64,000 nt of DNA from the NCBI RefSeq assembly GCF_006345805.1, contig NC_043016.1, forward strand, positions 7,316,001-7,380,000, in the 5' to 3' direction. Source of the DNA: Octopus sinensis (taxonomy: Eukaryota). Numbering within the stretch: the stretch's first letter is position 1; the number at the start of each line of letters is the position of its first letter. Of the stretch, positions 5,079 to 60,846 are shown piece after piece. The notes under the pieces were generated by a model. The model did not search any database. It saw nothing but the letters and a program-made list of their open reading frames with translations, and was not told the origin of the DNA. A program made the translations under genes and the position numbers.

Positions 5079-5676
5079 TGTATAAACATATATATATAAC
5101 CACCACACTCACATACACACGCACATATATACTCCCATGCTAGCATGGAAAGCAGATGTTAAACAATGATGGTGATGAGGACATGTATATATATACACAC
5201 ACACACACATGTGCGCATGCACACACACCACACACACACCACACCAGTAGGGATATGAGATCAGTTTGGATCAGTTCACACAAATCAGTTATTACAATTT
5301 TTTCTGTAACAAGACCAGTTGATTGTTTGCTGGTCACTGCATAAATTCCACCCACCTGAGCTAAAACAATTGACTTTCAAATGTATTGATGTGAGATTTA
5401 ACCATTTGGTTTTTTGCTTCATAAAATATTCTATTTTAGCATTAAGTTCTGAAGATTAGTAAAGTGTATTCCTTATGAAAATTGTAAGAAAATATAGATG
5501 AGGGTTTTTATGTAACTATGTATATATGAATGAGTGTATTTGTGTGTGTCTGTAAATGTGCATAATCTTCCACCTGACCTTTGTCAACCTACCTACCCAG
5601 AATACTTTTAACCTGTTATAAACTGTAATTCCGGTCTCAGTTTGATTTATTGTATCTATTCAGCTTCTTGTCCATC

Positions 5677-5727
<51 letters not shown>

Positions 5728-6348
5728 TGTATAAACATATATATATAACACACACACTCACATACACACGCACATATATACTCCCATGCTAGCATGGAAA
5801 GCAGATGTTAAACAATGATGGTGATGAGGACATGTATATATATACACACACACACACATGTGCGCATGCACACACACACACACACACACATACAGTAGGG
5901 ATATGAGATCAGTTTGGATCAGTTCACACAAATCAGTTATTACAATTTTTTCTGTAACAAGAACCAGTTGATTGTTTGCTGGTCACTGCATAGAAATTCC
6001 ACCCACCTGAGCTAACAATTTGACTTTCAAATGTATTGATGTGAGATTTAACCATTTGGTTTTTTGCTTCATAAAATATTCTATTTTAGCATTAAGTTCT
6101 GAAGATTAGTAAAGTGTATTCCTTATGAAAATTGTAAGAAAATATAGATGAGGGTTTTTATGTAACTATGTATATATGAATGAGTGTATTTGTGTGTGTC
6201 TGTAAATGTGCATAATCTTCCACCTGACCTTTGTCAACCTACCTACCCAGAATACTTTTAACCTGTTATAAACTGTAATTCCGGTCTCAGTTTGATTTAT
6301 TGTATCTATTCAGCTTCTTGTCCATCTTTCTATATATATATATATATA
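5031..6348. repeat. Near-identical tandem duplication of about 650 bp bounded by (TA)n tracts
   Basis: 5062-5681 versus 5710-6331 differ, by eye, mainly by 1-2 nt indels. Confidence 0.9.
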
Positions 6349-7569: not shown

Positions 7570-8368
7570 TAGGGTGTGATGAATAACTTGTCTAAATTTG
7601 CAAAAATCTCATTTTACTAGATCATTTTAACAGACATCTCATTTTAACAGATATATTTACCAAAATTACATAAAAATATCTTGAAAGACTAAAGAGTAAA
7701 TTTATTCAATAAAATCACCCATTGGCTCCAACCACATCCTCTAGACGACTTCAGAATCTCCTTCAACTCTTCTGGATGGTCTCCTTGTTTAAGTTGGTGA
7801 AGGCTGCCATAATCCTTGCCTTCAGTTCATCTTTGGTTTTACAAGGAGTTTTGTTGGTCTCTTGCTCAACTGCACCCCACACATAATAATCCAGGGGATT
7901 GCAGTTGGAGGAGTTAGGGGTGATGTGGTCACAAAAATTGTTTGACAACTATGATTGGGTTCTCCTGCTTGTTTGCCATAGTGCAGAGTGCTATTGTCAG
8001 ATATAGGGTCTTCTAGCAGCAACTACTCCATGCACTTGATGTAGGCCTCTGTTGAATCTGAGGCTGTGTGGGGAAAATGAATAGAAGCATAACATTGCCA
8101 TCACTAGTGATCACTCCAAACATCATGATGTTGACTGGATGTTTAATTTTTATCACTCATGGTACATGTCCTCTGATTAAAACCCAAACACTCAGCATGT
8201 CGTTTCCAAATTTCTGGCAGAGTGAATTGTGTCATGGTGCTATTTTTCTCACAGACAATGCCCAACTGACCCTACATTACTGTATACTTGATATAATAAA
8301 AAAAAAACAATGCACATGCACAAAATTAAAAATATAAAATGGTGACAATTTACCCATTGCACCCTGTA
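7570..8368 (-). mobile_element. IS630/Tc1/mariner element, maT (DD37D)-like, internally deleted, both ends present
   Basis: Ends TAGGGTGTGATGAATAACTTGTC and GACAATTTACCCATTGCACCCTG|TA; PNS..CNPLDYYVWG motif; homologous to 24765 and 34080 copies. Confidence 0.8.
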
Positions 8369-8392
8369 TGTTTGTATATATATATATATATG

Positions 8393-8431
<39 letters not shown>

Positions 8432-8878
8432 GTATATGTATGTATATGTATATATGTATGTATATGTATATATGTATATATATATGTATGTATGTATGTA
8501 TATGTATGTATGTATATATATATATATGTATGTATGTATATATATATATATGTATGTATGTATATATATATATATGTATGTATGTATATATATATGTATG
8601 TATGTATATATATATATATGTATGTATGTATATATATATGTATGTATGTATGTATATGTATGTATATGTATATATGTATGTATATGTATATATGTATGTA
8701 TATATATATATATGTATGTATGTATGTATATGTATATATGTATGTATATGTATATATGTATGTATATGTATATATGTATGTATATATATATATGTATGTA
8801 TATATATATGTATGTATATATATATATGTATGTATATATATATATGTATATGTATATATGTATATGTATATATGTATG

Positions 8879-8923
<45 letters not shown>

Positions 8924-8924
8924 G

Positions 8925-8985
<61 letters not shown>

Positions 8986-9002
8986 GTATGTATATATGTA
9001 TG

Positions 9003-9059
<57 letters not shown>

Positions 9060-9262
9060 GTATATGTATATATGTATGTATGTATATGTATATGTATATA
9101 TGTATGTATGTATATGTATATATATATGTATGTATGTATATGTATATATGTGTATATGTATGTATGTATATGTATGTATATGTATGTATGTATGTATATG
9201 TATGTATATGTATGTATGTATATGTATGTATGTATATGTATGTATGTATATGTATGTATATG

Positions 9263-9294
<32 letters not shown>

Positions 9295-9375
9295 TATATG
9301 TGTATATATGTATGTGTGTATATATATATATGTGTGTGTATATATATATATGTGTGTATATATATGTATGTACAT
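8369..9375. repeat. About 1 kb compound (TA)n/(TATG)n microsatellite
   Basis: Seen directly; source of spurious IY/CM-rich ORFs. Confidence 0.95.
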
Positions 9376-10147
9376 AAGAATTTAATGCATTTTCAATCTT
9401 CTCTCAGTATGTTCAGGGTTTGTAAAATTGTCTATACATAATTTTACATTGGTCAATCAGATTCCAACATTTTTTTTTACTTCCATTTTATTTGATATTT
9501 TTACAATATTAAAAATAATTCCATGTTTTATGCTTTATGACTCAAGTGAAATTAGAAGAAAAGTAATAGAAAAGAACTTTATTGAGCAGCTTAAATCCAT
9601 CTTATGTGGCCAACAATGATGGCAACTATGACAATAATATATTGATTTAAATGTAATTTTACTCTTAATCTGTAGTAATACTGACAGTATAATTAGTCCA
9701 AATTTTCACTTAATTTAATTTTAAAATAATTGAAACAGGACTATGGTTTGTAGTCATTTTCCAACATCTGATTGTAGCCTAATCCTCTGTGTCTCTGGTT
9801 GGTTAAAATGTTTCTAAAAGTGAGTGTTATCAATGATGGCTGTGTTGCCACATTCATCAAACCTTGACACCTAAACTACACGCTGATTGGTTTAAATAGT
9901 GTTTATTAGCTTCAGCCTGCTGGATCCTTCCAGGAAGTGAAGGAAAGATTCAGTTATTTCACTACAGTTGTCAAATGTGAAGTACATTACTGTTTGTTAA
10001 TGTTACTGCATAAATGTTTACCTGAAGATTGTTATAAAACAAGAAAGTACTTGTAATACAGTAATATGTAATATTGCAAAATTGTAAACATGCAAAAATA
10101 AAAATCCAGACCGTTGGAATTTGATTGGCCTGACCAAGTCGGTCCGA

Positions 10148-10201
10148 CCCCACTGAAGAGGCTACGGCAAAAAAAGCTGAAACTGACTGATCAGTCTGGG
10201 G
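10148..10201 (+). ncRNA. Canonical type I hammerhead ribozyme, predicted cleavage after GUC (C10196)
   Basis: Stem I CCCCA/TGGGG, core CTGAAGA, stem II GGCT/AGCT (G.U closing), GAAA, stem III ACTGA/TCAGT with CTGA loop, then C. Confidence 0.85.
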
Positions 10202-10534
10202 ATATCTTTGACTGCTCCTTTTCAGGTGATTACAGTCCCTGTCAGCATGTATCTTCACAATTATGTGCTGTGACTGCACCATTAGAGCATTTAGCTCTTA
10301 TTCATAGTAATGTAGGTGTTTCTAACACACTCAATCATATTTAATGTTGGTTATAGTTTTCCTGTTTGGTACACATTGATTACCAGTGCCTACATTAATT
10401 ATTTATACACACACACCACACATAGAACAATCAACTAGAGTTTATATAGCTTGAATATTTATGTTAAAGATATTATGCAGTAAATAATATTTACTTTCAC
10501 ACACCACACACACACTATATATATATTATATATC

Positions 10535-10572
<38 letters not shown>

Positions 10573-10684
10573 TATTTATGTTAAATATATATATTATATA
10601 TGTGTAACATATATATTATATAATCTATGTATAATATATATGTTACATATGATGTATATATATTACATATGACACACACACACA

Positions 10685-10716
<32 letters not shown>

Positions 10717-11754
10717 TACATGATATGTTATATGTATATATATATATAATGTTGTATGTGTGTGTGTATATAATATATATTAATTCGATATATGGATATT
10801 ATACATAAAGTATTTGTGTATATGTTATATAATTTGTTTTAAATTCCTATGTTATACCAATATTTGTTGCAATCTTATATTATACCCATGTTTATATGAG
10901 ATTGATATTAAATTCACCCAGTATTAATTTTATATAATTATTGAATATATTTTCACACAGAACTGATCACATTTAGATTTCTTGCCTTTTTCTGTCAATT
11001 TGGGATAATATATTCACAGATTCTTTCATCTACTAGAAATTAAAATTTTTTTTTTTTATTATAAATTATTAATTATTTATACAAAATATATTAAAATATG
11101 AATTTAAAATACACTGCTATTTACTTTACATCAGAAGAGACTATTTTGTAAATTATAGAACTTTAACTTCAAAGTTATATATCTTTTTAAGTCTACGAAA
11201 TTCCAATCACTTGTTTATCTTTCAAATTTGTTTGTCTGGTTTTCTTGAATCTGGCTTAATGTTAGAGTATTTAACGAGTAATAAACACCTAGATTAGAAT
11301 ACTAAACACCTGTAGTTTTAGCCTTCACTTCTGTAAATTTTTCACTTTCTTTCCCTCCATCTCTTTTCATCCCTTGTTTCCTCATTTTACATTCTCACAA
11401 TTATTTCTGAACAAGTGAAACAAATTTTTTTGTCATGTTATTAGTGCACAGCTAAATAGACTTGGGTATTATCAAGTTAATTGCCTTATTTATCATGGGT
11501 ACAATTTAACTGTGATTATACCTGAAATGCATCTGGTCAAACCTTTTAGGTGGCCACCCAACATTAAATCAGTACAGCTTTTTGTAAATACAAAATGGAA
11601 TGTAAAAGAGAATGGTTTTCTTTAACTCTTCACCCCCCTCCACCTTATTTTGGTAGTCATTTGACTATAACTAAATGCAACATGCTTTCCTTTTTTTGTT
11701 TTAAGATTTGTTCAACACCTAGTCTTGTTACAGCTCAGAGAAACATGTTCTGAA

Positions 11755-47757: not shown

Positions 47758-48210
47758 GCTGGACAAAATATTTAGCAGGATTTCTTCCAGCTCTACTTTC
47801 TGTATTCACATTCTGTAGAGGCCAATTTTTTTCTTCCTTTCATTCTTTCGGGGTCAATGAAATAAGCATCAATTGAGCACTGAATTTTTATGCAATAAAT
47901 AACCTTTCCTCTAAAACTTCAGGCCTTGTGACTATGGTAGGAACAATTATTATTATCATTATTTATCTATTTCTTTACTACCCACAAGGGGTTAAACACA
48001 GAGAGGACAAACAAGGACAGAAAAACGAATTAAGTCGATTATATCGACCCCAGTGCGTAACAGGTACTTAATTTATTGACCCCCGAAAAGGATGAAAGGC
48101 AAAGTCGACCTTGGCGGAATTTGAACTCAGAATGTACTGAGGTCGATGCAGCCAAGTAGCTTCCTCTCCCAAAAATTTCAGATCCTGTGCCTATTGTAGA
48201 AAGAATTATT
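47750..48210. mobile_element. SINE family B copies (+ 47750-47945; - 47965-48140 fused to a + 3' part 48133-48210)
   Basis: Direct similarity to family B; inverted junction at GTACTG. Confidence 0.75.
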
Positions 48211-48291
48211 ATTATCATCATTATTATTATTGTTGTTGTTGTTGTTGTTGTTTTCATTGTTATTAAAATTGTTGTTTTTGTTTACTTTCAG

Positions 48292-49446
48292 GTAAGCATT
48301 GTCCAAGAACAAATTGATCAAGCGACAGAATACAAGGGCCAGTTGACTAAGAAAGAGAAAAGCATTAATGATCCTGCTATGAAGAAAGTCTATCAGGCAG
48401 AGATCAGAATGATTGATGAGCAAAATGAACGACTAATGATGCAGCTACTACACTATTGTGCAGGTTTGCAGCATTGCCTTGATCAACAAGAAGAAGAACG
48501 TCAAAAGGTTGAACAAGCTCAACCCACTCTTCCTGTTTCTGCTGGTCTTCAGTCAAATTCCTCCAGTCCATTACCAGTCCTTTCCATTTCGGTTGTGCCT
48601 CCTGATGTAACAGAAGGAATGATGGAAGCTAATGAAGGTAGCATCAATGATGGCACAAACATTGATAATGGTAGCGATGGTGATGGCTATGGAAACGGTA
48701 ACGGTGTTTTTGACAGCAGTAGACCAAGCATGAAAGCCACTAATGCAATGAGATCTAGTGGTGCAGTCACTGGAGGTGGTGCCTCAGAGGAGCTAGAACA
48801 CAGTATTTCCAAATACCCACAAATGTCCGTTGTGATATCACCACCAATGCTACCACCATCACCACCGTCACCAACAACACCAACACCATTGCACCACCAA
48901 GAAGAAGAAGAAGAAGAAGAAGAAGAAGAAGAGGAACAGGAACAAAATGAAGTGCCAGTTCAACAACAACAACAATCTCCATCACCTCTCACCACCACAG
49001 TCACTCCTCACCAAGATCATCTCCTTCCAGAAGCAGCTGCTCTACTACAGCCCGCGCAACAACCGTCGTCGTTGTTGTCATCATCATCATCATCATCAAC
49101 GTCTCCCGCAACTGCAGCCTGGTCATCATTGTCATCATCGTCATCGTCATCGTTACCGTCATCGTCGTCGTCGTCGTCAACAACAGCCACACCTGCAGCA
49201 GCAACAGCAATAGCAGCTACTGCAGCAGTAACAACAACAACAACAACAACTTCAACCACAACAGCAACAACTATTATACCGACAACGTCACCTGAATCGC
49301 AACCACCAACAACACCAGGAGTAGCAGCTACAACTACAACAACAACAACAACAGCAGCAGCAGAAGCAACAACAATTAATCAGCCACAAATTGCTGACAA
49401 ACAACTAAATTTACTTAGCAAGTCTGTAGAATGTTCCGATTCTTGA
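48292..49446 (+). CDS. Probable terminal coding exon of an unidentified host gene: coiled-coil segment plus long low-complexity C-terminus (384 aa)
   Basis: Pyrimidine tract plus CAG acceptor at 48289-48291; protein-like VSIVQEQIDQATEYKGQL..EIRMIDEQNERLMMQLLHYCAGLQHCLDQQEE; frame open for 1.15 kb to TGA; AATAAA at 49731. Confidence 0.8.
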   Translation, partial: VSIVQEQIDQATEYKGQLTKKEKSINDPAMKKVYQAEIRMIDEQNERLMMQLLHYCAGLQHCLDQQEEERQKVEQAQPTLPVSAGLQSNSSSPLPVLSISVVPPDVTEGMMEANEGSINDGTNIDNGSDGDGYGNGNGVFDSSRPSMKATNAMRSSGAVTGGGASEELEHSISKYPQMSVVISPPMLPPSPPSPTTPTPLHHQEEEEEEEEEEEEQEQNEVPVQQQQQSPSPLTTTVTPHQDHLLPEAAALLQPAQQPSSLLSSSSSSSTSPATAAWSSLSSSSSSSLPSSSSSSSTTATPAAATAIAATAAVTTTTTTTSTTTATTIIPTTSPESQPPTTPGVAATTTTTTTTAAAEATTINQPQIADKQLNLLSKSVECSDS

Positions 49447-51262: not shown

Positions 51263-54200
51263 TATTGTTATATTTTGGAATGGTCATATTGCCAGTTTAG
51301 CCAATAAAAACACACGCACTATATATTTGGTGTTATTTTGCTTCAGTGTTATTTATTTTTACATTAATCTTAATCTTATTTCGGCCAGAGTTCTTTCGTC
51401 ACACTCCTGTGACCGCATCAGTGGTCCTTTGTTTTCTTCTTTCTTATTTGTGTCTCTCCTTAGTAACCGTCAGCCATTTTGTATAGATACAAAAACATAA
51501 ACAGAGAGAAAAAAAATCGTATACAACAGCAACAACAACAACAATTATAGGGAGAACCAACACACAAACACACACACAGATAACCATAGTCACAAAGACA
51601 CAAATAAAAGTTGTGTCATGGGGGTCACAATAGAAAATAAAGTTGAATGCAACAGGATCCTTGGACAGGGAGTCAGTAGACTTGAAACAGATAATAATAA
51701 CAATACTCGTAGGAACAAAAATAACAACCACAACAGAGGGAATGACAGGGACCTACAAACAGACATAAAACCCAACACTAATATGAACAACACATACATC
51801 AGAAACAGGAACAATGAAAATATCACTAGCGATAATCAGAATGATAGTAATAATGGCAATGGTAGGAATAACGGTAATAACAATAATAGTGGTAGTAGTA
51901 GGTGTGGTGGTGGTGGTGTACAGTAGAAGTAGTAATGATGGTAGTTGTGGTGGTATAAGTAATAATAGTAGTAGGTTAATGGTGGTAATAATAATAGGGA
52001 GGCTGATGATGAAAACAGTAACGATATGAAGATAACCCTAGAATGACCATTGACATGTATACCCACCCCTTTGACACTCAATTCTTCAACGTATGTGACA
52101 AAACTTACTGCATGAGCCGGATTTATCCAACAACACATTACCCTTCAACAAAAGAGTCTACATCCCAAGACATACTAATGACCATATGGAAGCACAGTTC
52201 ACTATAGCTAGGAGGACCAACTTAGACAGATTTTAGGATATACACTAAGAGACAGAGACAGAATAAGACAGAGGCCCAACAACTCGTGATTAAAACTGCA
52301 TGTGGCCTACATAAGCTCATTCAGCGCACGAGGAATGGAGAGGTGGTATGCCTTCCCACAGATAAGTCCGACAGGATGTCAATAGACAGCTTACCGAACT
52401 ACATCCAGGCAATGCAACCTCATATCGCCAAGACAAATATACAACTGTACAGGCACATGAGGAGAGAGAAAAGGTCCTCAACACCCACATGATGATGTGG
52501 ACAATTGTTCTGGGACCCCAGAAACGTACAGCAAATAATTCCAAGCCTGGAACAATGATATCCCAGCACTGTAGGACTTTGCAAGGACCATAAAGGTTTT
52601 TACTGACCCTATAGCAGGACCACCAACAAGACCAGTCTGTGGAGCGAATATCGCTAGCAATTACAGAATCTCCTACTTCCTCTCAATGATCATACGCCCT
52701 ATAATCTGGATGTCACCTGATGTTTGTGACAGCACAGAAGATCTCCTCAGCAGATCGATGACTGTAACAACACTTGTGACCTGACAGGATGTATGGTTGG
52801 GTGTATCATGGATGTGGTATCCCTATACCCATCGATCGACGTAGATTTTGCAGTGGAGAAGTGCATGGAGATGATCAATGAGAGCCAGGGGTGGAGTTCC
52901 GTAATGTCAACACAGAAGAACTGGGCCTCCTACTTAGACTGACATGTAATAATGAATACTTAGATAAACATAATCTTAGTAGTTTCTGCCCCAGTAGATG
53001 TTTAAGAGGTAGACCGCCCACAATTACTTCTATGGCTAGGAAGACACATATAGAAGATGGCGCGGATGGACCAGAGCCATACGGAGCCCCGCAAATGTCC
53101 ATCAGATAAAGAAAATGATCACACATGCACTAGGAGTTAGTATAGAGTTACCCTAAAAGGCCACACGTTTAAGTTTAATAATAGAATATATGCCAGGACG
53201 AGGGGGCAGCCATCGGCGTTAGTATCGCTGTGTGATGTGGCCAACTGTTTCATGGTATGGTGGGACAGAAGGCTTAAAGAACGCCTAACACAGAACTCCA
53301 TACTCGTAAACATGTACTCTCGCTATGTTGATATCAACATAGTGGTAAAGGCACCCCCACAAGAGAGTAATGTTGATATAGTGATAGAAACTAATACTAT
53401 GGAGAGCATCCAGCAAATAGCTAACTCCATCTACCAGAGTATTAAGGTCACAATAGACTACCCCACTAAACACCCCAACCATAGACTACCAGTACTAGAC
53501 ACTGAACTCTGGCTAGAAATTGTGAATAATAAAACCCAAATCCTTCATTCATACTATGCCAAACCTATGGCCTCAAAATACTTGATCCACCGGAACTCAG
53601 CCATTGCGGACAATGCCAAATTCAATATTTTGATGGCAGACCTCGTCAGAATAATGAGAAATGTGTCATGCATGTGCGAGCCCACAGAGTTAAAGAGACA
53701 CATACAATATTTCATTCACTGCTTGCAGTTCTCAGGTTACAGCCATAAAGAAAGGATCAGAGTATACAAAGGAGCCATGAAGAAATTTGATAATATATTA
53801 TGTAATGATAGGAATGGGATTTGCCCACTCTATAGGAACAAGTCATGGAACACTATAGAAAGGACAAAAAAGAAAATAGGGAAGGCCAACTCTTGGTATG
53901 ATAGCCATAAATACCAGAGTGTCATGTTCGTTGACACCACCCCTGGAGGTGAACTGGCATACCGCTTTAGAAGGACCCTAGACAAACTTAAGCTAAGAAT
54001 TAAGGTTGTTGAAAAGCCAGGCAACCCTATCAAATCTATAATTGGTAGAACCTATCCTTTTAGTAGAACCCCCTGTATGGATAAGTACTGTACTGTATGT
54101 AGATTTAGCCCACAAACAAACTGTAAAGCCAGAAATGTAGTCTATAGTATAAGATGTATAGAGGGACGATGCAGTAACAAGACAACAACATACGTAGGGG

Positions 54201-55076
54201 AAATGGCAAGAAGCATAGGAGAGTGGGTAAATGAACATTGGAGACAACTCAAGGAAGGTAAAAGCTCATAGATTCTGTACCAACACACCAAACAGGAACA
54301 CGGGGGATCAATCAATAACATAGAAATTAAAATATTGTCCACACATAGAACAGATGCAACAATTAGACAAATTACAGAAGCTACACACATAATATAAAAT
54401 AAACCTAGCCTGAATAGAAAATTAGAATGGAGCACTAACACACACCACAACATATGACGATAGAGGATCCCGAAAACATAATAAATACACAGATAAATAA
54501 ACTAATAGAAATAAATAACTATATATATATATATATTTTTTTTTTTCGATTCGATTTATTATTATTACTAGTATTGTTGTTATACATACATACAAGCATA
54601 TGTAATGATAATAATAAGTGGATGTAAACACATGAGCAAAATAGGAATAAACAAAAACAACAAAAACAAAATACACATTACATGAACATATATAAACAGA
54701 AGATACAAATATTACAGGCATCCCCCCACAAACACACACTAAATAAACATAGACGCACATAGAGATATAAGCATGCGCAAATGAAGACATACAATAGAAA
54801 TACAAAATGGCTGACGGTTGGTAAGGAGAGACACAGATAAGAAAGAAGGGGTCAAAGGACCACTGATGCGGTCACAGGAGTGTGACGAAAGAACTCTGGC
54901 CGAAATAAGATTAAGATTAATGTAAAAAATAAATAACACTGAAGCAAAATAACACCAAATATATAGTGCGTGTGTTTTTATTGGCTAAACTGGCAATATG
55001 ACCATTCCGAAATATAACAATAACTGTTTCAACACACGACTTCACATAAAAAATCTTGCACAACAAATATTTAAAC
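51263..55076 (+). mobile_element. Penelope-like retroelement (RT plus C-terminal GIY-YIG, Neptune-like Cys linker), frameshifted, with inverted pseudo-LTRs
   Basis: PTDKS.R, TRPVCG, MDVVSLYPSID, SRYVD, LPVLD, C..C..C linker, NVVYSIRC..YVGE..R..EH, RQITEA..PSLN; 51263-51484 is the reverse complement of 54800-55022. Confidence 0.9.
54857..54901 (+). ncRNA. Hammerhead-like motif with variant core in the PLE pseudo-LTR (antisense twin at 51383-51427)
   Basis: GGACCA-CTGATGCG-GTCACA(GGAG)TGTGAC-GAAA-GAAC-TC-TGGCC: stems I and II intact, A9 replaced by C. Confidence 0.5.
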
Positions 55077-58919: not shown

Positions 58920-60846
58920 TTATCCTCTAAAAATCACTTAAGTGCTGCACACGTAGAGGCTACTTTTGTACTCAATGCCATTTTTTTTATTTGTAAATAC
59001 AAATTATCATCAAAGAAGAAATGGTTATTTTCAAGTATTAAGTTCATTATTTCTAAAATTAAGTACTTTGAGAATCTTTCTTGAATATGATTTGGGGGTT
59101 TTGTCAACCAGAAGTTCATGGCTTCACTTTCTAAGTCATGTGGGATGTTGATGTATGTATCAGGTCATTAAAAATGAAATATCTGATTTTGAACTGAAAG
59201 TTTATTTTACTTTATCTCAAAAAAAAAGCAATGAAGTTAATCAAAGAATGCACCTAAATTATCAACACAATTTTGCCATTTTATCAGAAGCTTATTTATG
59301 CCAACAGTGAAGAATTCTGGAGAGCAAGAGGTGATGAAATCACAAAAGGCTGTTTTTGCATCTTCTTCAGAATCAAAGTTTTTTCCTTGTAAAAAGTTGT
59401 TTAATGCCTGGAAAATGTGATAATCAGTTGGTGCAAGGTCTGGTGAATATGGTAGATGACAGAGTACTTCCAAGTTCAGTTCCTGTAACTTGAGTAGCAT
59501 TCTGTGTGCAACATGTGTTCGAGCATTGTCTTGCAAGAGAATTGGCCTGTCTCTATTGACCAATCTCAGTTGTTTAATTGCAAGTTCACTCACCATTTCA
59601 TCCAATTGGTTGATGTATACATCTGCTGTAATTGACTTAAAAGGTCTCATGAAGCTGCAGTGGATGACACCAGCACTGGACCACCAAACCGGCACCATTA
59701 GCTTCTGGTGAATATTCTTTTTTGGATTGGGTTTTGGCACTTTGTTGCTATCCAACCACCATTCAGAATGCTTGCCATTGTGGAAAAGAATCCATTTTTC
59801 ATCACATGTAACATGATGCAAAAATGGTTTGCTTTTATGCCATGACAGCAAAGAACAGCAAGTTTCAAGATAACATGTCATTTAATGCTCATTAAGTTCA
59901 TGTGGTACTCACTTGTCCAGTTTCTTTACCTTGCTGATTTGTTTCAAATGGTCCAATACAGTTGGAATCGAGACATCAAACCTTGCTGCTTTCCAGTTCG
60001 TCATTATCCACCTTGGTCTCAGCTCTACCACAGAGCTAATTTCTAAGAGTAAAGTCACTAGACCAGAACTTCTCAAACCATCGACATACAGTGTGCTCAT
60101 TCACCACATCTTCACCAAACACTTCATAGATATTTCGAGCTGTCTGGGATGCATTAGTTCCACGACAGAACTCATACTTATTAACAACGCAAATCTTTGA
60201 TCTGTCCCTGGGTTCACAGAAATTGATTTACAAAAGAAAACTCACAATATAATCAGACACCATGAATTGCATTTCGGAAAGTGATGATGTAATTCTTCTA
60301 TGTTGTAAAACAAAGAATTGTCAGGATAAAACATTAGAGTTAATGACTATCAAATTTGGTACATAAAAAAATTCAGCCATTTCATTCTCAATGGCCTGAT
60401 ACTTGTTATATCAAAGCTGAATATTGTTTCCCGGTGTATTCTTTCTGATATGTAACTTAGAAAGTCCATATCATTTCAGATGAAGCTCGGCACCATTTTT
60501 CATAATGGTTTAAGTATTATATTTAATAGGTGTTGTGTATTTGATGTAGGCTTGGAAATGATTGGAATTTCAAGTCTTGGTTTTGGAATTTCAACGTATG
60601 TTCTATATTTACCTTGAATTTGTTTTTGATTTATGAACTTTAGGTAATCCATAAAAATTATTGGTCTTTGAAGTTGGTTAAATAATTGATTTTATTCGGT
60701 CAGGCTCTTTGATTTTATCATCAAGTTGTTATAAAACCATGCCTCTATAATGGTTTTATTCCTAATTATAATTGCCCCAATCTTGTCAGCTTTTAGATAA
60801 TTATTGATGAGTCTTTTTATAAAATACTGAATACCTGTAATTAGTT

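What the first reader, a model, noticed from the sequence alone, without database searches (positions are those of the whole stretch)
10120..10215. Complete canonical type I hammerhead ribozyme in apparently non-repetitive, probably intronic DNA
Seen: CCCCA | CTGAAGA | GGCT-ACGGCAAAAAA-AGCT | GAAA | CTGA-CTGA-TCAG | TC | TGGGG. Every catalytic-core position is present, stem I has 5 bp, stem III has 5 bp, and the site is the optimal GUC. Stem I may extend (AGTC 10137-10140 / GACT 10210-10213) across an internal loop. Its U-rich side (CTTTG) is complementary to the CAAA of loop II, a possible loop-bulge tertiary contact. Established: monomeric type I HHRs with A-rich loop II and stem I internal loops are the active, conserved intronic class (amniote HH9 in RECK and HH10). 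They differ from the minimal dimer-requiring HHRs of Penelope elements. The flanks resemble none of the repeats in this window. Inference: possibly a domesticated single-copy cephalopod self-cleaving RNA acting in a long intron or defining an ncRNA end. A CCAAT/TATA-like GATTGGTTTAAATAG lies about 260 bp upstream.
Basis: partly seen in the sequence, partly recalled or inferred. Interest (0 to 1): 0.85.

Follow-up and report, generated by a model that had tools for sequence, protein, structure and literature searches.

The report
Hammerhead ribozyme motif in octopus intron
A compact, nearly complete hammerhead self-cleaving RNA motif sits in a very long intron of an octopus PDZD8-like gene. It is too well formed to be an easy accident, but it looks more like a slightly decayed leftover of a ribozyme-carrying mobile element than a proven, conserved host ribozyme.

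Summary
All unpaired core bases are present, helices I/II/III have 5/4/5 bp, and the site is GUC with C17 at 10196.

It is the only such hit in the window. Random-sequence modelling gives about 2e-11 per base for a motif this compact, roughly 0.1 per octopus-sized genome.

Against a working, domesticated ribozyme:
- The conserved G10.1-C11.1 pair is G·U.
- Helix II is weak.
- A rival fold that buries the core is 4.7 kcal/mol more stable.
- No Rfam hammerhead model, including HH9 and HH10, comes near threshold.

Context: the locus lies in sense orientation in the last intron (over 48 kb) of an octopus PDZD8 orthologue, so "intronic" is supported.

New: a second, minimal hammerhead-like motif lies 92 nt upstream on the same strand (10018-10056). 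Its helix III is one base pair capped by a palindromic GUAC loop. This points to retroelement ancestry rather than a lone domesticated ribozyme.

Copy number and orthologue conservation could not be tested. Verdict: a real motif, probably a retroelement-derived relic (0.45). Chance is 0.30 and domestication 0.12. Interest is modest.

The parts
10148..10152 (+). Helix I, 5' strand (CCCCA)
   Evidence: Pairs with 10197-10201 over 5 bp.
10153..10159 (+). Core box C3 U4 G5 A6 A7 G8 A9 (CUGAAGA)
   Evidence: Read directly. Aligned to the CUGAUGA box by the Rfam Hammerhead_3 and RAGATH-1-hammerhead models.
10160..10178 (+). Helix II (GGCU/AGCU, 4 bp, with 10.1-11.1 = G10160·U10178) and the 11-nt loop ACGGCAAAAAA
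   Evidence: The rival pairing CGGC 10165-10168 / GCUG 10176-10179 appears in the minimum-energy fold.
10179..10181 (+). Core G12 A13 A14
10182..10195 (+). Helix III hairpin, A15.1-U16.1 plus 4 bp with loop CUGA. It contains the 8-nt palindrome CUGAUCAG.
10196..10196 (+). C17; predicted cleavage is 3' of this base (GUC site)
   Evidence: Position in the descriptor match. Cleavage itself was not tested.
10197..10201 (+). Helix I, 3' strand (UGGGG)
10137..10147 (+). Distal helix I, 5' side (AG, CGGUC, GA pair across internal loops)
   Evidence: Fold constrained to the hammerhead helices, 10130-10220.
10202..10216 (+). Distal helix I, 3' side (UC, GACUG, CU)
10018..10056 (+). Second, minimal type I hammerhead-like motif: UUAC / CUGAAGA / UUGUU-AUAA-AACAA / GAAA / helix III = A10046-U10051 capped by palindromic GUAC / U17 = 10052 / GUAA. 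An alternative long reading spans 10014-10091 with an 8-bp helix I.
   Evidence: Found by the relaxed scan and the minimal scan. Chance rate is 15 per 100 Mb, with none palindromic. No Rfam match.
48292..49446 (+). Last coding exon of the host gene, an octopus PDZD8 orthologue (context only)
   Evidence: 88-94% identical to O. bimaculoides XP_014768616.1/P0007. The P0007 gene spans 154.8 kb, and the gene call just upstream carries PDZD8_N and MMM1 domains.

Best explanation
The sequence is a true hammerhead-type motif of biological rather than accidental origin. It is most probably a solitary, slightly decayed ribozyme left by a hammerhead-carrying retroelement of the Penelope-like-element or non-LTR-retrozyme lineage. 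It lies in the sense orientation in the last intron (over 48 kb) of an octopus PDZD8 orthologue. It is transcribed as part of the pre-mRNA. The downstream copy (10148-10201) could fold into helices I-III around an intact core and cut itself 3' of C10196, leaving a 2',3'-cyclic phosphate and a 5'-OH. This would probably be slow and affect only a small fraction of molecules, for three reasons: the G10.1·U11.1 wobble, a weak helix II, and a more stable rival fold that pairs the CUGA box with UCAG. The upstream minimal copy (10018-10056) has the dimer-requiring architecture typical of metazoan repeat hammerheads and is probably inactive on its own. No host function is implied. Shown: the motif, its rarity under random models, the second motif, and the intron context. 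Inferred: retroelement ancestry and residual activity.
For: - The motif has a complete core and 5/4/5-bp helices, and it is unique in the window.
- The chance rate for a motif this compact is about 2e-11 per base, or about 0.1 per genome. None of 33 looser random hits was comparably stable. The reversed-window control gave none.
- A second hammerhead-like motif lies 92 nt upstream on the same strand. Its helix III is one A-U pair capped by a palindromic tetraloop (AGUACU).
- That helix III architecture is what PMC4209133 describes for most metazoan type I hammerheads. The same paper lists palindromic 15.2-16.2/loop 3 as a sign of non-random motifs.
- The chance rate for such minimal hits is 1.5e-7 per base, with 0 palindromic in 100 Mb. 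That gives about 1e-4 within 600 nt.
- The main helix III contains the palindrome CUGAUCAG plus a 4-nt CUGA repeat. This fits a slipped version of a short palindromic helix III (sequence reading; inference).
- G·U at 10.1-11.1 is one C-to-T transition away from the canonical G-C, as expected for neutral decay.
- The segment has low GC (32%) and is flanked on both sides by (TA/CA)n microsatellites. PMC8557442 describes microsatellites as preferred PLE targets.
- Cephalopod genomes do carry hammerheads: 235 Rfam Hammerhead_1 hits in the giant squid (PMC6962438).
Against: - No other copy of the segment, and no PLE coding remnant, lies nearby.
- The two motifs share nothing beyond the core boxes, so they are not recent tandem monomers.
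- Neither motif has G10.1-C11.1 or the extra base between positions 9 and 10.1 that marks PLE minimal hammerheads (PMC4209133).
- A 5-bp helix III is atypical for metazoan repeat hammerheads.
- No Rfam hammerhead model scores above 19.6 bits.
- The putative excised RNA folds no better than shuffles as a circle.
- Genome-wide copy number was not testable here.
Confidence: 0.45

Rival explanations
1. Chance: an accidental match to a short, degenerate consensus in AT-rich intronic DNA, with no ribozyme ancestry and no role.
For: - Perreault et al. state that sequences fitting the consensus are expected by chance in large databases (PMC3088659).
- With loops allowed up to 40 nt, my analytic estimate is about 9 hits at (5,4,5) bp per 2.7 Gb genome. 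This agrees with 0 in 200 Mb.
- G·U at 10.1-11.1 and U-A in the upstream motif are what chance favours and real families avoid (PMC4209133).
- The hammerhead fold is only about 7e-5 of the predicted ensemble. The 4.7 kcal/mol gap to the best fold is typical of random hits of equal energy: 47 of 106 had a gap that small.
- There is no Rfam support.
- The words CUGAAGAGGCU...AGCUGAAACUGA recur in unrelated Glu/Ala-rich coding repeats.
Against: - On an energy criterion the expectation is about 0.1 per genome and 3e-6 per window.
- A second motif with a palindromic helix III within 100 nt has a probability of about 1e-4 to 1e-3 under the same null.
- The reversed-sequence control gave no hits.
- The nulls are iid or Markov-1 and may understate the chance rate in real DNA by an order of magnitude.
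Confidence: 0.3
2. One reading: a domesticated, single-copy, monomeric intronic hammerhead, analogous to amniote HH9/HH10. It would cut the PDZD8 pre-mRNA intron or define the end of an intron-derived RNA.
For: - It lies in sense orientation in a long intron of a conserved gene, as do the RECK and C10orf118 hammerheads (PMC3088659).
- Its stable 5-bp helix III allows action as a monomer.
- Helix I is 5 bp up to an internal loop and helix II is 4 bp up to a loop. These are close to the 6 bp and 4 bp given for canonical metazoan hammerheads in PMC4209133.
- It is not repeated in the window.
- It is statistically rare.
Against: - A ribozyme under selection would be expected to keep G10.1-C11.1 and a fold that wins. 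Here it has G·U, a marginal helix II and a rival fold 4.7 kcal/mol better.
- There is no match to the HH9/HH10 models.
- The neighbouring degenerate motif suggests mobile-element ancestry.
- Conservation is untested.
- In a distant cephalopod, the 10 kb upstream of the orthologous last exon holds no hammerhead (L002). This is weak evidence, because the motif here lies 38 kb upstream.
Confidence: 0.12
3. The GC-richer island 10109-10226 is a spliced (alternative) coding exon, and the hammerhead shape is a by-product of codons: PLKRLRQKKLKLTDQSG.
For: - One frame is open for 76 codons.
- AG|A at 10108/10109 and CAG|GUGAUU at 10226/10227 look like splice sites.
- The translation aligns with residues 101-120 of a cephalopod PDZD8 transcript. 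The score is 45, reached by 3 of 2000 shuffles.
Against: - The true octopus exon for that part of the protein reads SPKMRRKKSLPETQSSVDADPSK. It lies upstream of the window, along with all exons for residues 1-638.
- The order along the gene would be wrong.
- 118 nt is not a multiple of 3.
- The homologous exon in other cephalopods is 84 codons long (P0010).
- There is no Pfam hit. The antisense ORF has no homologue among 5.8 billion proteins.
Confidence: 0.03

Closest known systems
Amniote intronic hammerheads HH9 (RECK) and HH10 (C10orf118/CTCL)
   Same: Type I topology, sense orientation inside an intron of a conserved protein-coding gene, isolated rather than in tandem repeats, and a helix III long enough for monomeric action.
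   Different: Those are conserved across mammals, or mammals and birds, and cleave in vitro (PMC3088659, PMC6155905). Here conservation and activity are untested. The Rfam HH9/HH10 models do not match, and the G10.1-C11.1 pair is G·U.
Minimal hammerheads of Penelope-like elements (Cervera & de la Pena 2014, PMC4209133)
   Same: The upstream motif 10018-10056 has a short helix I (4 bp) and a helix III reduced to one pair with a palindromic loop. Most PLE hammerheads occur as single, widespread, highly variable copies from truncated elements. The segment sits between microsatellites.
   Different: There is no pLTR or PLE ORF nearby. There is no extra base between positions 9 and 10.1, no G10.1-C11.1, and helix II is 4-5 bp rather than 7-8 bp. 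The main motif has a full 5-bp helix III.
Metazoan non-LTR retrozymes and satellite type I hammerheads (Schistosoma Sm-alpha, newt satellite 2, mussel, coral; PMC7229834)
   Same: Type I hammerhead in low-GC DNA, with two motifs in the same orientation about 100-130 nt apart.
   Different: Retrozymes are tandem repeats of 150-450 bp whose monomers resemble each other. Here the two units share only the core, and there is no repeat in the window. The spacing is shorter, and the predicted circular fold is unremarkable. A 2026 preprint reports vertebrate retrozymes as depleted from introns (10.64898/2026.07.22.740005).
Rfam Hammerhead_1 hits reported in cephalopods (235 in the giant squid, PMC6962438)
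   Same: They show that type I hammerheads exist in cephalopod genomes.
   Different: Those pass the Rfam model. This motif does not.

Membership tests
Hammerhead ribozyme (any type) | Conserved unpaired core: C3 U4 G5 A6 N7 G8 A9, G12 A13 A14, and H17 after the A15.1-U16.1 pair | tested here: met
   CUGAAGA 10153-10159, GAA 10179-10181, A10182-U10195 and C10196.
Hammerhead ribozyme (any type) | Three helices radiating from the core; helix I open (type I) | tested here: met
   5, 4 and 5 bp; helix I is open at both ends.
Hammerhead ribozyme (any type) | Highly conserved G10.1-C11.1 pair | tested here: not met
   G10160·U10178 wobble in the main motif and U10029-A10042 in the upstream motif. 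PMC4209133 lists G10.1-C11.1 as a hallmark.
Hammerhead ribozyme (any type) | Match to a curated covariance model at its gathering score | tested here: not met
   0 matches at gathering. Best scores are Hammerhead_3 at 19.6 bits against 48.5 and RAGATH-1-hammerhead at 14.9 against 56.3.
Hammerhead ribozyme (any type) | The hammerhead fold is the favoured or a competitive fold | tested here: not met
   -10.6 against an MFE of -15.3 kcal/mol, so about 7e-5 of the ensemble. Nearest-neighbour energies ignore core and tertiary contacts, so this is indicative only.
Hammerhead ribozyme (any type) | Mg2+-dependent self-cleavage at the predicted site | not testable with these tools
   Needs in vitro transcription.
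HH9/HH10 amniote intronic hammerheads | Sequence and structure match to the family models | tested here: not met
   Both models are in the Rfam library searched. Within the hammerhead clan, nothing beat a 19.6-bit type III reading.
HH9/HH10 amniote intronic hammerheads | Sense-strand location in an intron of a conserved gene | tested here: met
   Only the last exon of the PDZD8 orthologue is in the window (48292-49443, +). Upstream exons are absent from 1-48291. The intron assignment is inferred from the O. bimaculoides gene model.
HH9/HH10 amniote intronic hammerheads | Syntenic conservation across species | not testable with these tools
   The O. bimaculoides gene range (154.8 kb) is too long for DNA to be returned. 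No other octopod DNA could be reached.
PLE minimal hammerheads | Location in the pLTR of a Penelope-like element | tested here: not met
   No PLE coding remnant lies within the segment. The only PLE-like ORF is 43 kb away and unrelated at the DNA level. Solo copies from truncated elements cannot be excluded.
PLE minimal hammerheads | Unpaired base between positions 9 and 10.1; long helix II (7-8 bp) | tested here: not met
   Helix II starts directly after A9 and is 4 bp (main) or 5 bp (upstream).
PLE minimal hammerheads | Palindromic 15.2-16.2 / loop 3 | tested here: met
   The upstream motif has AGUACU, a perfect palindrome. The main motif contains the palindrome CUGAUCAG, but its hairpin loop CUGA is not palindromic.
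PLE minimal hammerheads | Membership of a multi-copy consensus family with covariation in the same genome | not testable with these tools
   Only 64 kb of the genome is available.
Metazoan non-LTR retrozymes | Tandem repeats of 150-450 bp with similar monomers, each carrying a type I hammerhead | tested here: not met
   There is no similarity between the two units beyond the core: score 19 against a shuffle mean of 20.7. There is no repeat in the window.

The most novel reading that the evidence does not exclude
The motif is a conserved, functional hammerhead in the last intron of octopod PDZD8. It would be the first domesticated intronic hammerhead outside amniotes. It might work with the upstream minimal motif to release a roughly 144-nt intron-derived RNA (10053-10196) or to modulate use of the distant last exon.
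Probability: 0.1. Interest if true: 0.7.

Novelty: new member of a known kind. Interest (0 to 1): 0.3.

Why it matters
Hammerheads in animal genomes are overwhelmingly retroelement cargo. The few domesticated intronic ones (RECK, C10orf118) are known only from amniotes, and their function is still unknown. A conserved intronic hammerhead in a cephalopod would show that such domestication happened independently in protostomes, and it would give a second system in which to ask what intronic self-cleavage does. As things stand, the locus mainly illustrates how a well-formed motif can lack the marks of a selected ribozyme. It is also a concrete single-locus test case for separating relic, chance and function.

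Tried and rejected
- **Exon hypothesis.** The 10109-10226 island looked like an exon of the host gene: open frame, splice-like edges, and a peptide resembling residues 101-120 of a cephalopod PDZD8 transcript. I rejected it once the full O. bimaculoides orthologue showed the real exon sequence and showed that all exons before the last lie outside the window. The homologous mRNA region of L001 has no hammerhead.
- **Looking for orthologous or paralogous copies through ORFs over the motif.**
  - Exact look-ups of the 103-aa antisense ORF and the 76-aa sense ORF found nothing.
  - A homology search with the antisense ORF found nothing.
  - The O. bimaculoides locus was located, but no DNA was returned because the gene spans 154.8 kb.
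  - L002, a distant cephalopod with 10 kb upstream of the last exon, has no hammerhead.
- **Pattern scans.** I scanned metagenome and viral contigs for the core plus helix II. All 12 hits are Glu/Ala-rich coding repeats, not ribozymes.
- **Rfam's type III reading** (10137-10188, cleavage after C10144). It has a 7-bp helix III but no possible helix I, so I rejected it.
- **Retrozyme-like circle.** Circular folds of 10053-10196 and 10084-10196 are no more stable than shuffles, with z of -1.5 and -0.9.
- **tRNA/SINE origin.** No tRNA-like gene in 9000-11500.
- **PLE remnant next to the motif.** tblastn with the window's PLE-like ORF found nothing near it.
It is only A-run/U-run complementarity and is not evidence.
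- **EMBO Rep 2010 paper on HH9/HH10.** It is not held in the library.

Full report
**What is there**

- Helix I: CCCCA (10148-10152) pairs with UGGGG (10197-10201).
- Core: CUGAAGA (10153-10159).
- Helix II: GGCU/AGCU around an 11-nt loop (10160-10178).
- GAA (10179-10181).
- Helix III: ACUGA-CUGA-UCAGU (10182-10195).
- C17 is 10196.

This holds even with helices relaxed to 3/3/2 bp. The distal AGUC/GACU pairing exists. A fold constrained to the hammerhead helices pairs still more of the distal helix I. The segment 9600-10480 has no second copy in the window. In natural hammerheads it is G-C, and PMC4209133 lists that pair as a hallmark.

**Is it more than chance?**

- In 200 Mb of Markov-1 random sequence with the window's composition there were 148 relaxed hits, 23 at (4,3,3) bp and none at (5,4,5) bp.
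- In a further 220 Mb, all 33 hits at (4,3,3) had sprawling loops and positive energies for the hammerhead structure. The candidate has -10.6 kcal/mol.
- Importance sampling on one criterion (full core, type I, energy of -10.6 or lower) gives 2.0e-11 per base-strand. That is 2.6e-6 per 64-kb window and about 0.1 per 2.7-Gb genome.
- With loops allowed up to 40 nt and only helix lengths required, my analytic estimate is about 9 per genome, consistent.
- The reversed window, a control that keeps real composition and inverted repeats, gave no hit.

So the motif is at or beyond the best that chance should give once per genome. These nulls are simple, though, and may understate real DNA. Perreault et al. 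warn that consensus-fitting sequences arise by chance in large databases (PMC3088659).

**What speaks against a working, selected ribozyme**

- No Rfam 15 family reaches its gathering score anywhere in the window.
- With permissive thresholds the best match in the hammerhead clan is a type III reading at 19.6 bits, against a cut-off of 48.5. That reading has no possible helix I.
- On the 59-nt core alone, the type I-shaped RAGATH-1 model gives 14.9 bits against 56.3. HH9, HH10 and Hammerhead_1 do not surface.
- The three-helix fold (-10.6 kcal/mol) loses to a rod-like fold (-15.3). The rival pairs the catalytic CUGA with UCAG of helix III and draws G12 into a CGGC/GCUG stem.
- The hammerhead fold is about 7e-5 of the predicted ensemble, in short and long contexts alike. 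These energies ignore core and tertiary contacts.
- The folding energy of 10130-10220 is ordinary, with z = -0.48.
- The proposed loop II / helix I contact is only an A-run facing a U-run.

**Genomic context**

- The long ORF at 48187-49446 contains a real exon starting at 48292. It is 88-94% identical to Octopus bimaculoides XP_014768616.1. The window therefore comes from an Octopus species other than O. bimaculoides.
- A library-wide search with a cephalopod transcript homologue (P0002) recovered the full O. bimaculoides protein P0007, 1021 aa.
- The gene for P0007 spans 154.8 kb in GCA_001194135.2. The gene call just upstream carries PDZD8_N and MMM1 domains. P0007 itself has C2 and C1 domains. 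The host is a PDZD8 orthologue.
- Only residues 639-1021 of P0007 map in the window. The well-conserved penultimate exon is absent from 1-48291.
- The last intron is therefore longer than 48 kb, and the motif lies in it on the sense strand, 38 kb upstream of the last exon. 'Probably intronic' is supported by inference from the gene model.

**A false lead**

The GC-richer island 10109-10226 has an open frame and splice-like edges. Its translation resembles residues 101-120 of P0002, with 3 of 2000 shuffles scoring as well. The true octopus exon reads differently and lies upstream of the window. The order along the gene would be wrong, and 118 nt is not a multiple of 3. The homologous mRNA has no hammerhead there. 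I treat the similarity as coincidence.

**A second motif**

A relaxed scan found a second CUGAAGA...GAAA unit upstream on the same strand. Read as a minimal hammerhead it spans 10018-10056:
- Helix I: UUAC/GUAA, continuing after a bulged U.
- Helix II: UUGUU-AUAA-AACAA.
- Helix III: the single pair A10046-U10051, capped by GUAC, so that AGUACU is a perfect palindrome.
- U17 is 10052.

[quoted passage not shown] Such units work only as dimers. Minimal hits of this quality occur 15 times per 100 Mb of random sequence with the local composition, and none was palindromic. One within 600 nt of the main motif therefore has a probability of about 1e-4.

The main motif's helix III contains the palindrome CUGAUCAG next to a CUGA repeat. 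It could be a slipped version of the same design; that is inference.

Against kinship:
- The two units share nothing beyond the core boxes.
- The upstream unit has U-A at 10.1-11.1.
- Both lack the extra base between positions 9 and 10.1 typical of PLE hammerheads.
- Rfam sees nothing at the upstream unit.
- The putative excised RNA is not unusually structured as a circle.

**Weighing**

- Animal hammerheads are mostly retroelement cargo, found in PLE pLTRs and in retrozyme tandem repeats of 150-450 bp. They often survive as single, highly variable copies from truncated elements (PMC4209133, PMC7229834).
- Cephalopods carry them too: 235 Rfam Hammerhead_1 hits in the giant squid (PMC6962438).
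- The 1-kb unique segment 9442-10480 has 32% GC and sits between two (TA/CA)n microsatellites. PMC8557442 describes these as preferred PLE targets.
- The statistical rarity of the main motif, a neighbouring dimer-type motif, and defects that one C-to-T transition could cause all fit a decaying retroelement-derived hammerhead best. I give this 0.45.
- Pure chance remains live at 0.30, because the nulls are simple and both motifs lack G10.1-C11.1.
Its location fits, but nothing else that marks HH9/HH10 could be shown, and the fold and base-pair defects argue against selection.
- Alternative exon gets 0.03.

**What could not be done**

No DNA from other octopods or from the rest of this genome was reachable:
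- ORF-based look-ups failed.
- The orthologous gene range was too long to return DNA.
- The one metagenome scan returned only Glu/Ala-rich coding repeats.

Copy number, synteny and cleavage therefore remain the deciding tests.

Noticed in passing
window 10018-10056 (+); long reading 10014-10091: A second hammerhead-like unit 92 nt upstream of the main motif, on the same strand. It has CUGAAGA/GAAA boxes and a 5-bp helix II. Its helix III is one A-U pair capped by palindromic GUAC, the dimer-type architecture of metazoan repeat hammerheads. The site is U17 and the 10.1-11.1 pair is U-A.
   Followed up: yes
window 53237-54271 (+): A 344-aa ORF ending in a CX4CxxC motif followed by VVYSIRC...YVGEMARSIGEWVNEH. 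By eye this is the linker plus GIY-YIG endonuclease of a Penelope-like element. Pfam finds nothing for it or for the upstream frames. No hammerhead was detected next to it. It is flanked by microsatellites at about 50.0-51.3 kb and 54.9-55.6 kb.
   Followed up: partly
window 59237-59881 (-): A mariner/Tc1-type transposase fragment (Pfam Transposase_1, E = 1.3e-19).
   Followed up: partly
window 9451-9531 and 10034-10130: An imperfect inverted repeat. The best block is GGTCAATCAGATTCCAAC / GTTGGAATTTGATTGGCC (16/18). The right arm overlaps the upstream hammerhead-like unit and ends 18 nt before the main motif. It might be the ends of a small foldback or MITE-like element, or it might be chance in AT-rich DNA.
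   Followed up: partly
window 8339-9441 and 10480-10830: Long (TA/CA)n microsatellite blocks bracket the 1-kb unique segment that holds both hammerhead-like units. Similar blocks recur across the window at about 41 kb, 50-51 kb, 55 kb and 62-63 kb.
   Followed up: no
window 48292-49446 (+): The last exon of an octopus PDZD8 orthologue. It has long Ser/Thr/Glu low-complexity tracts that differ by indels from O. bimaculoides (88% identity), so the window comes from another Octopus species.
   Followed up: yes
window 5446-5499 and 6096-6149 (+): The same 54-nt sequence occurs twice, 650 nt apart, which indicates a local duplication or repeat. It gives a trivial hammerhead-descriptor hit with helices of only 3, 3 and 1 bp, so it is not a ribozyme.
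   Followed up: no
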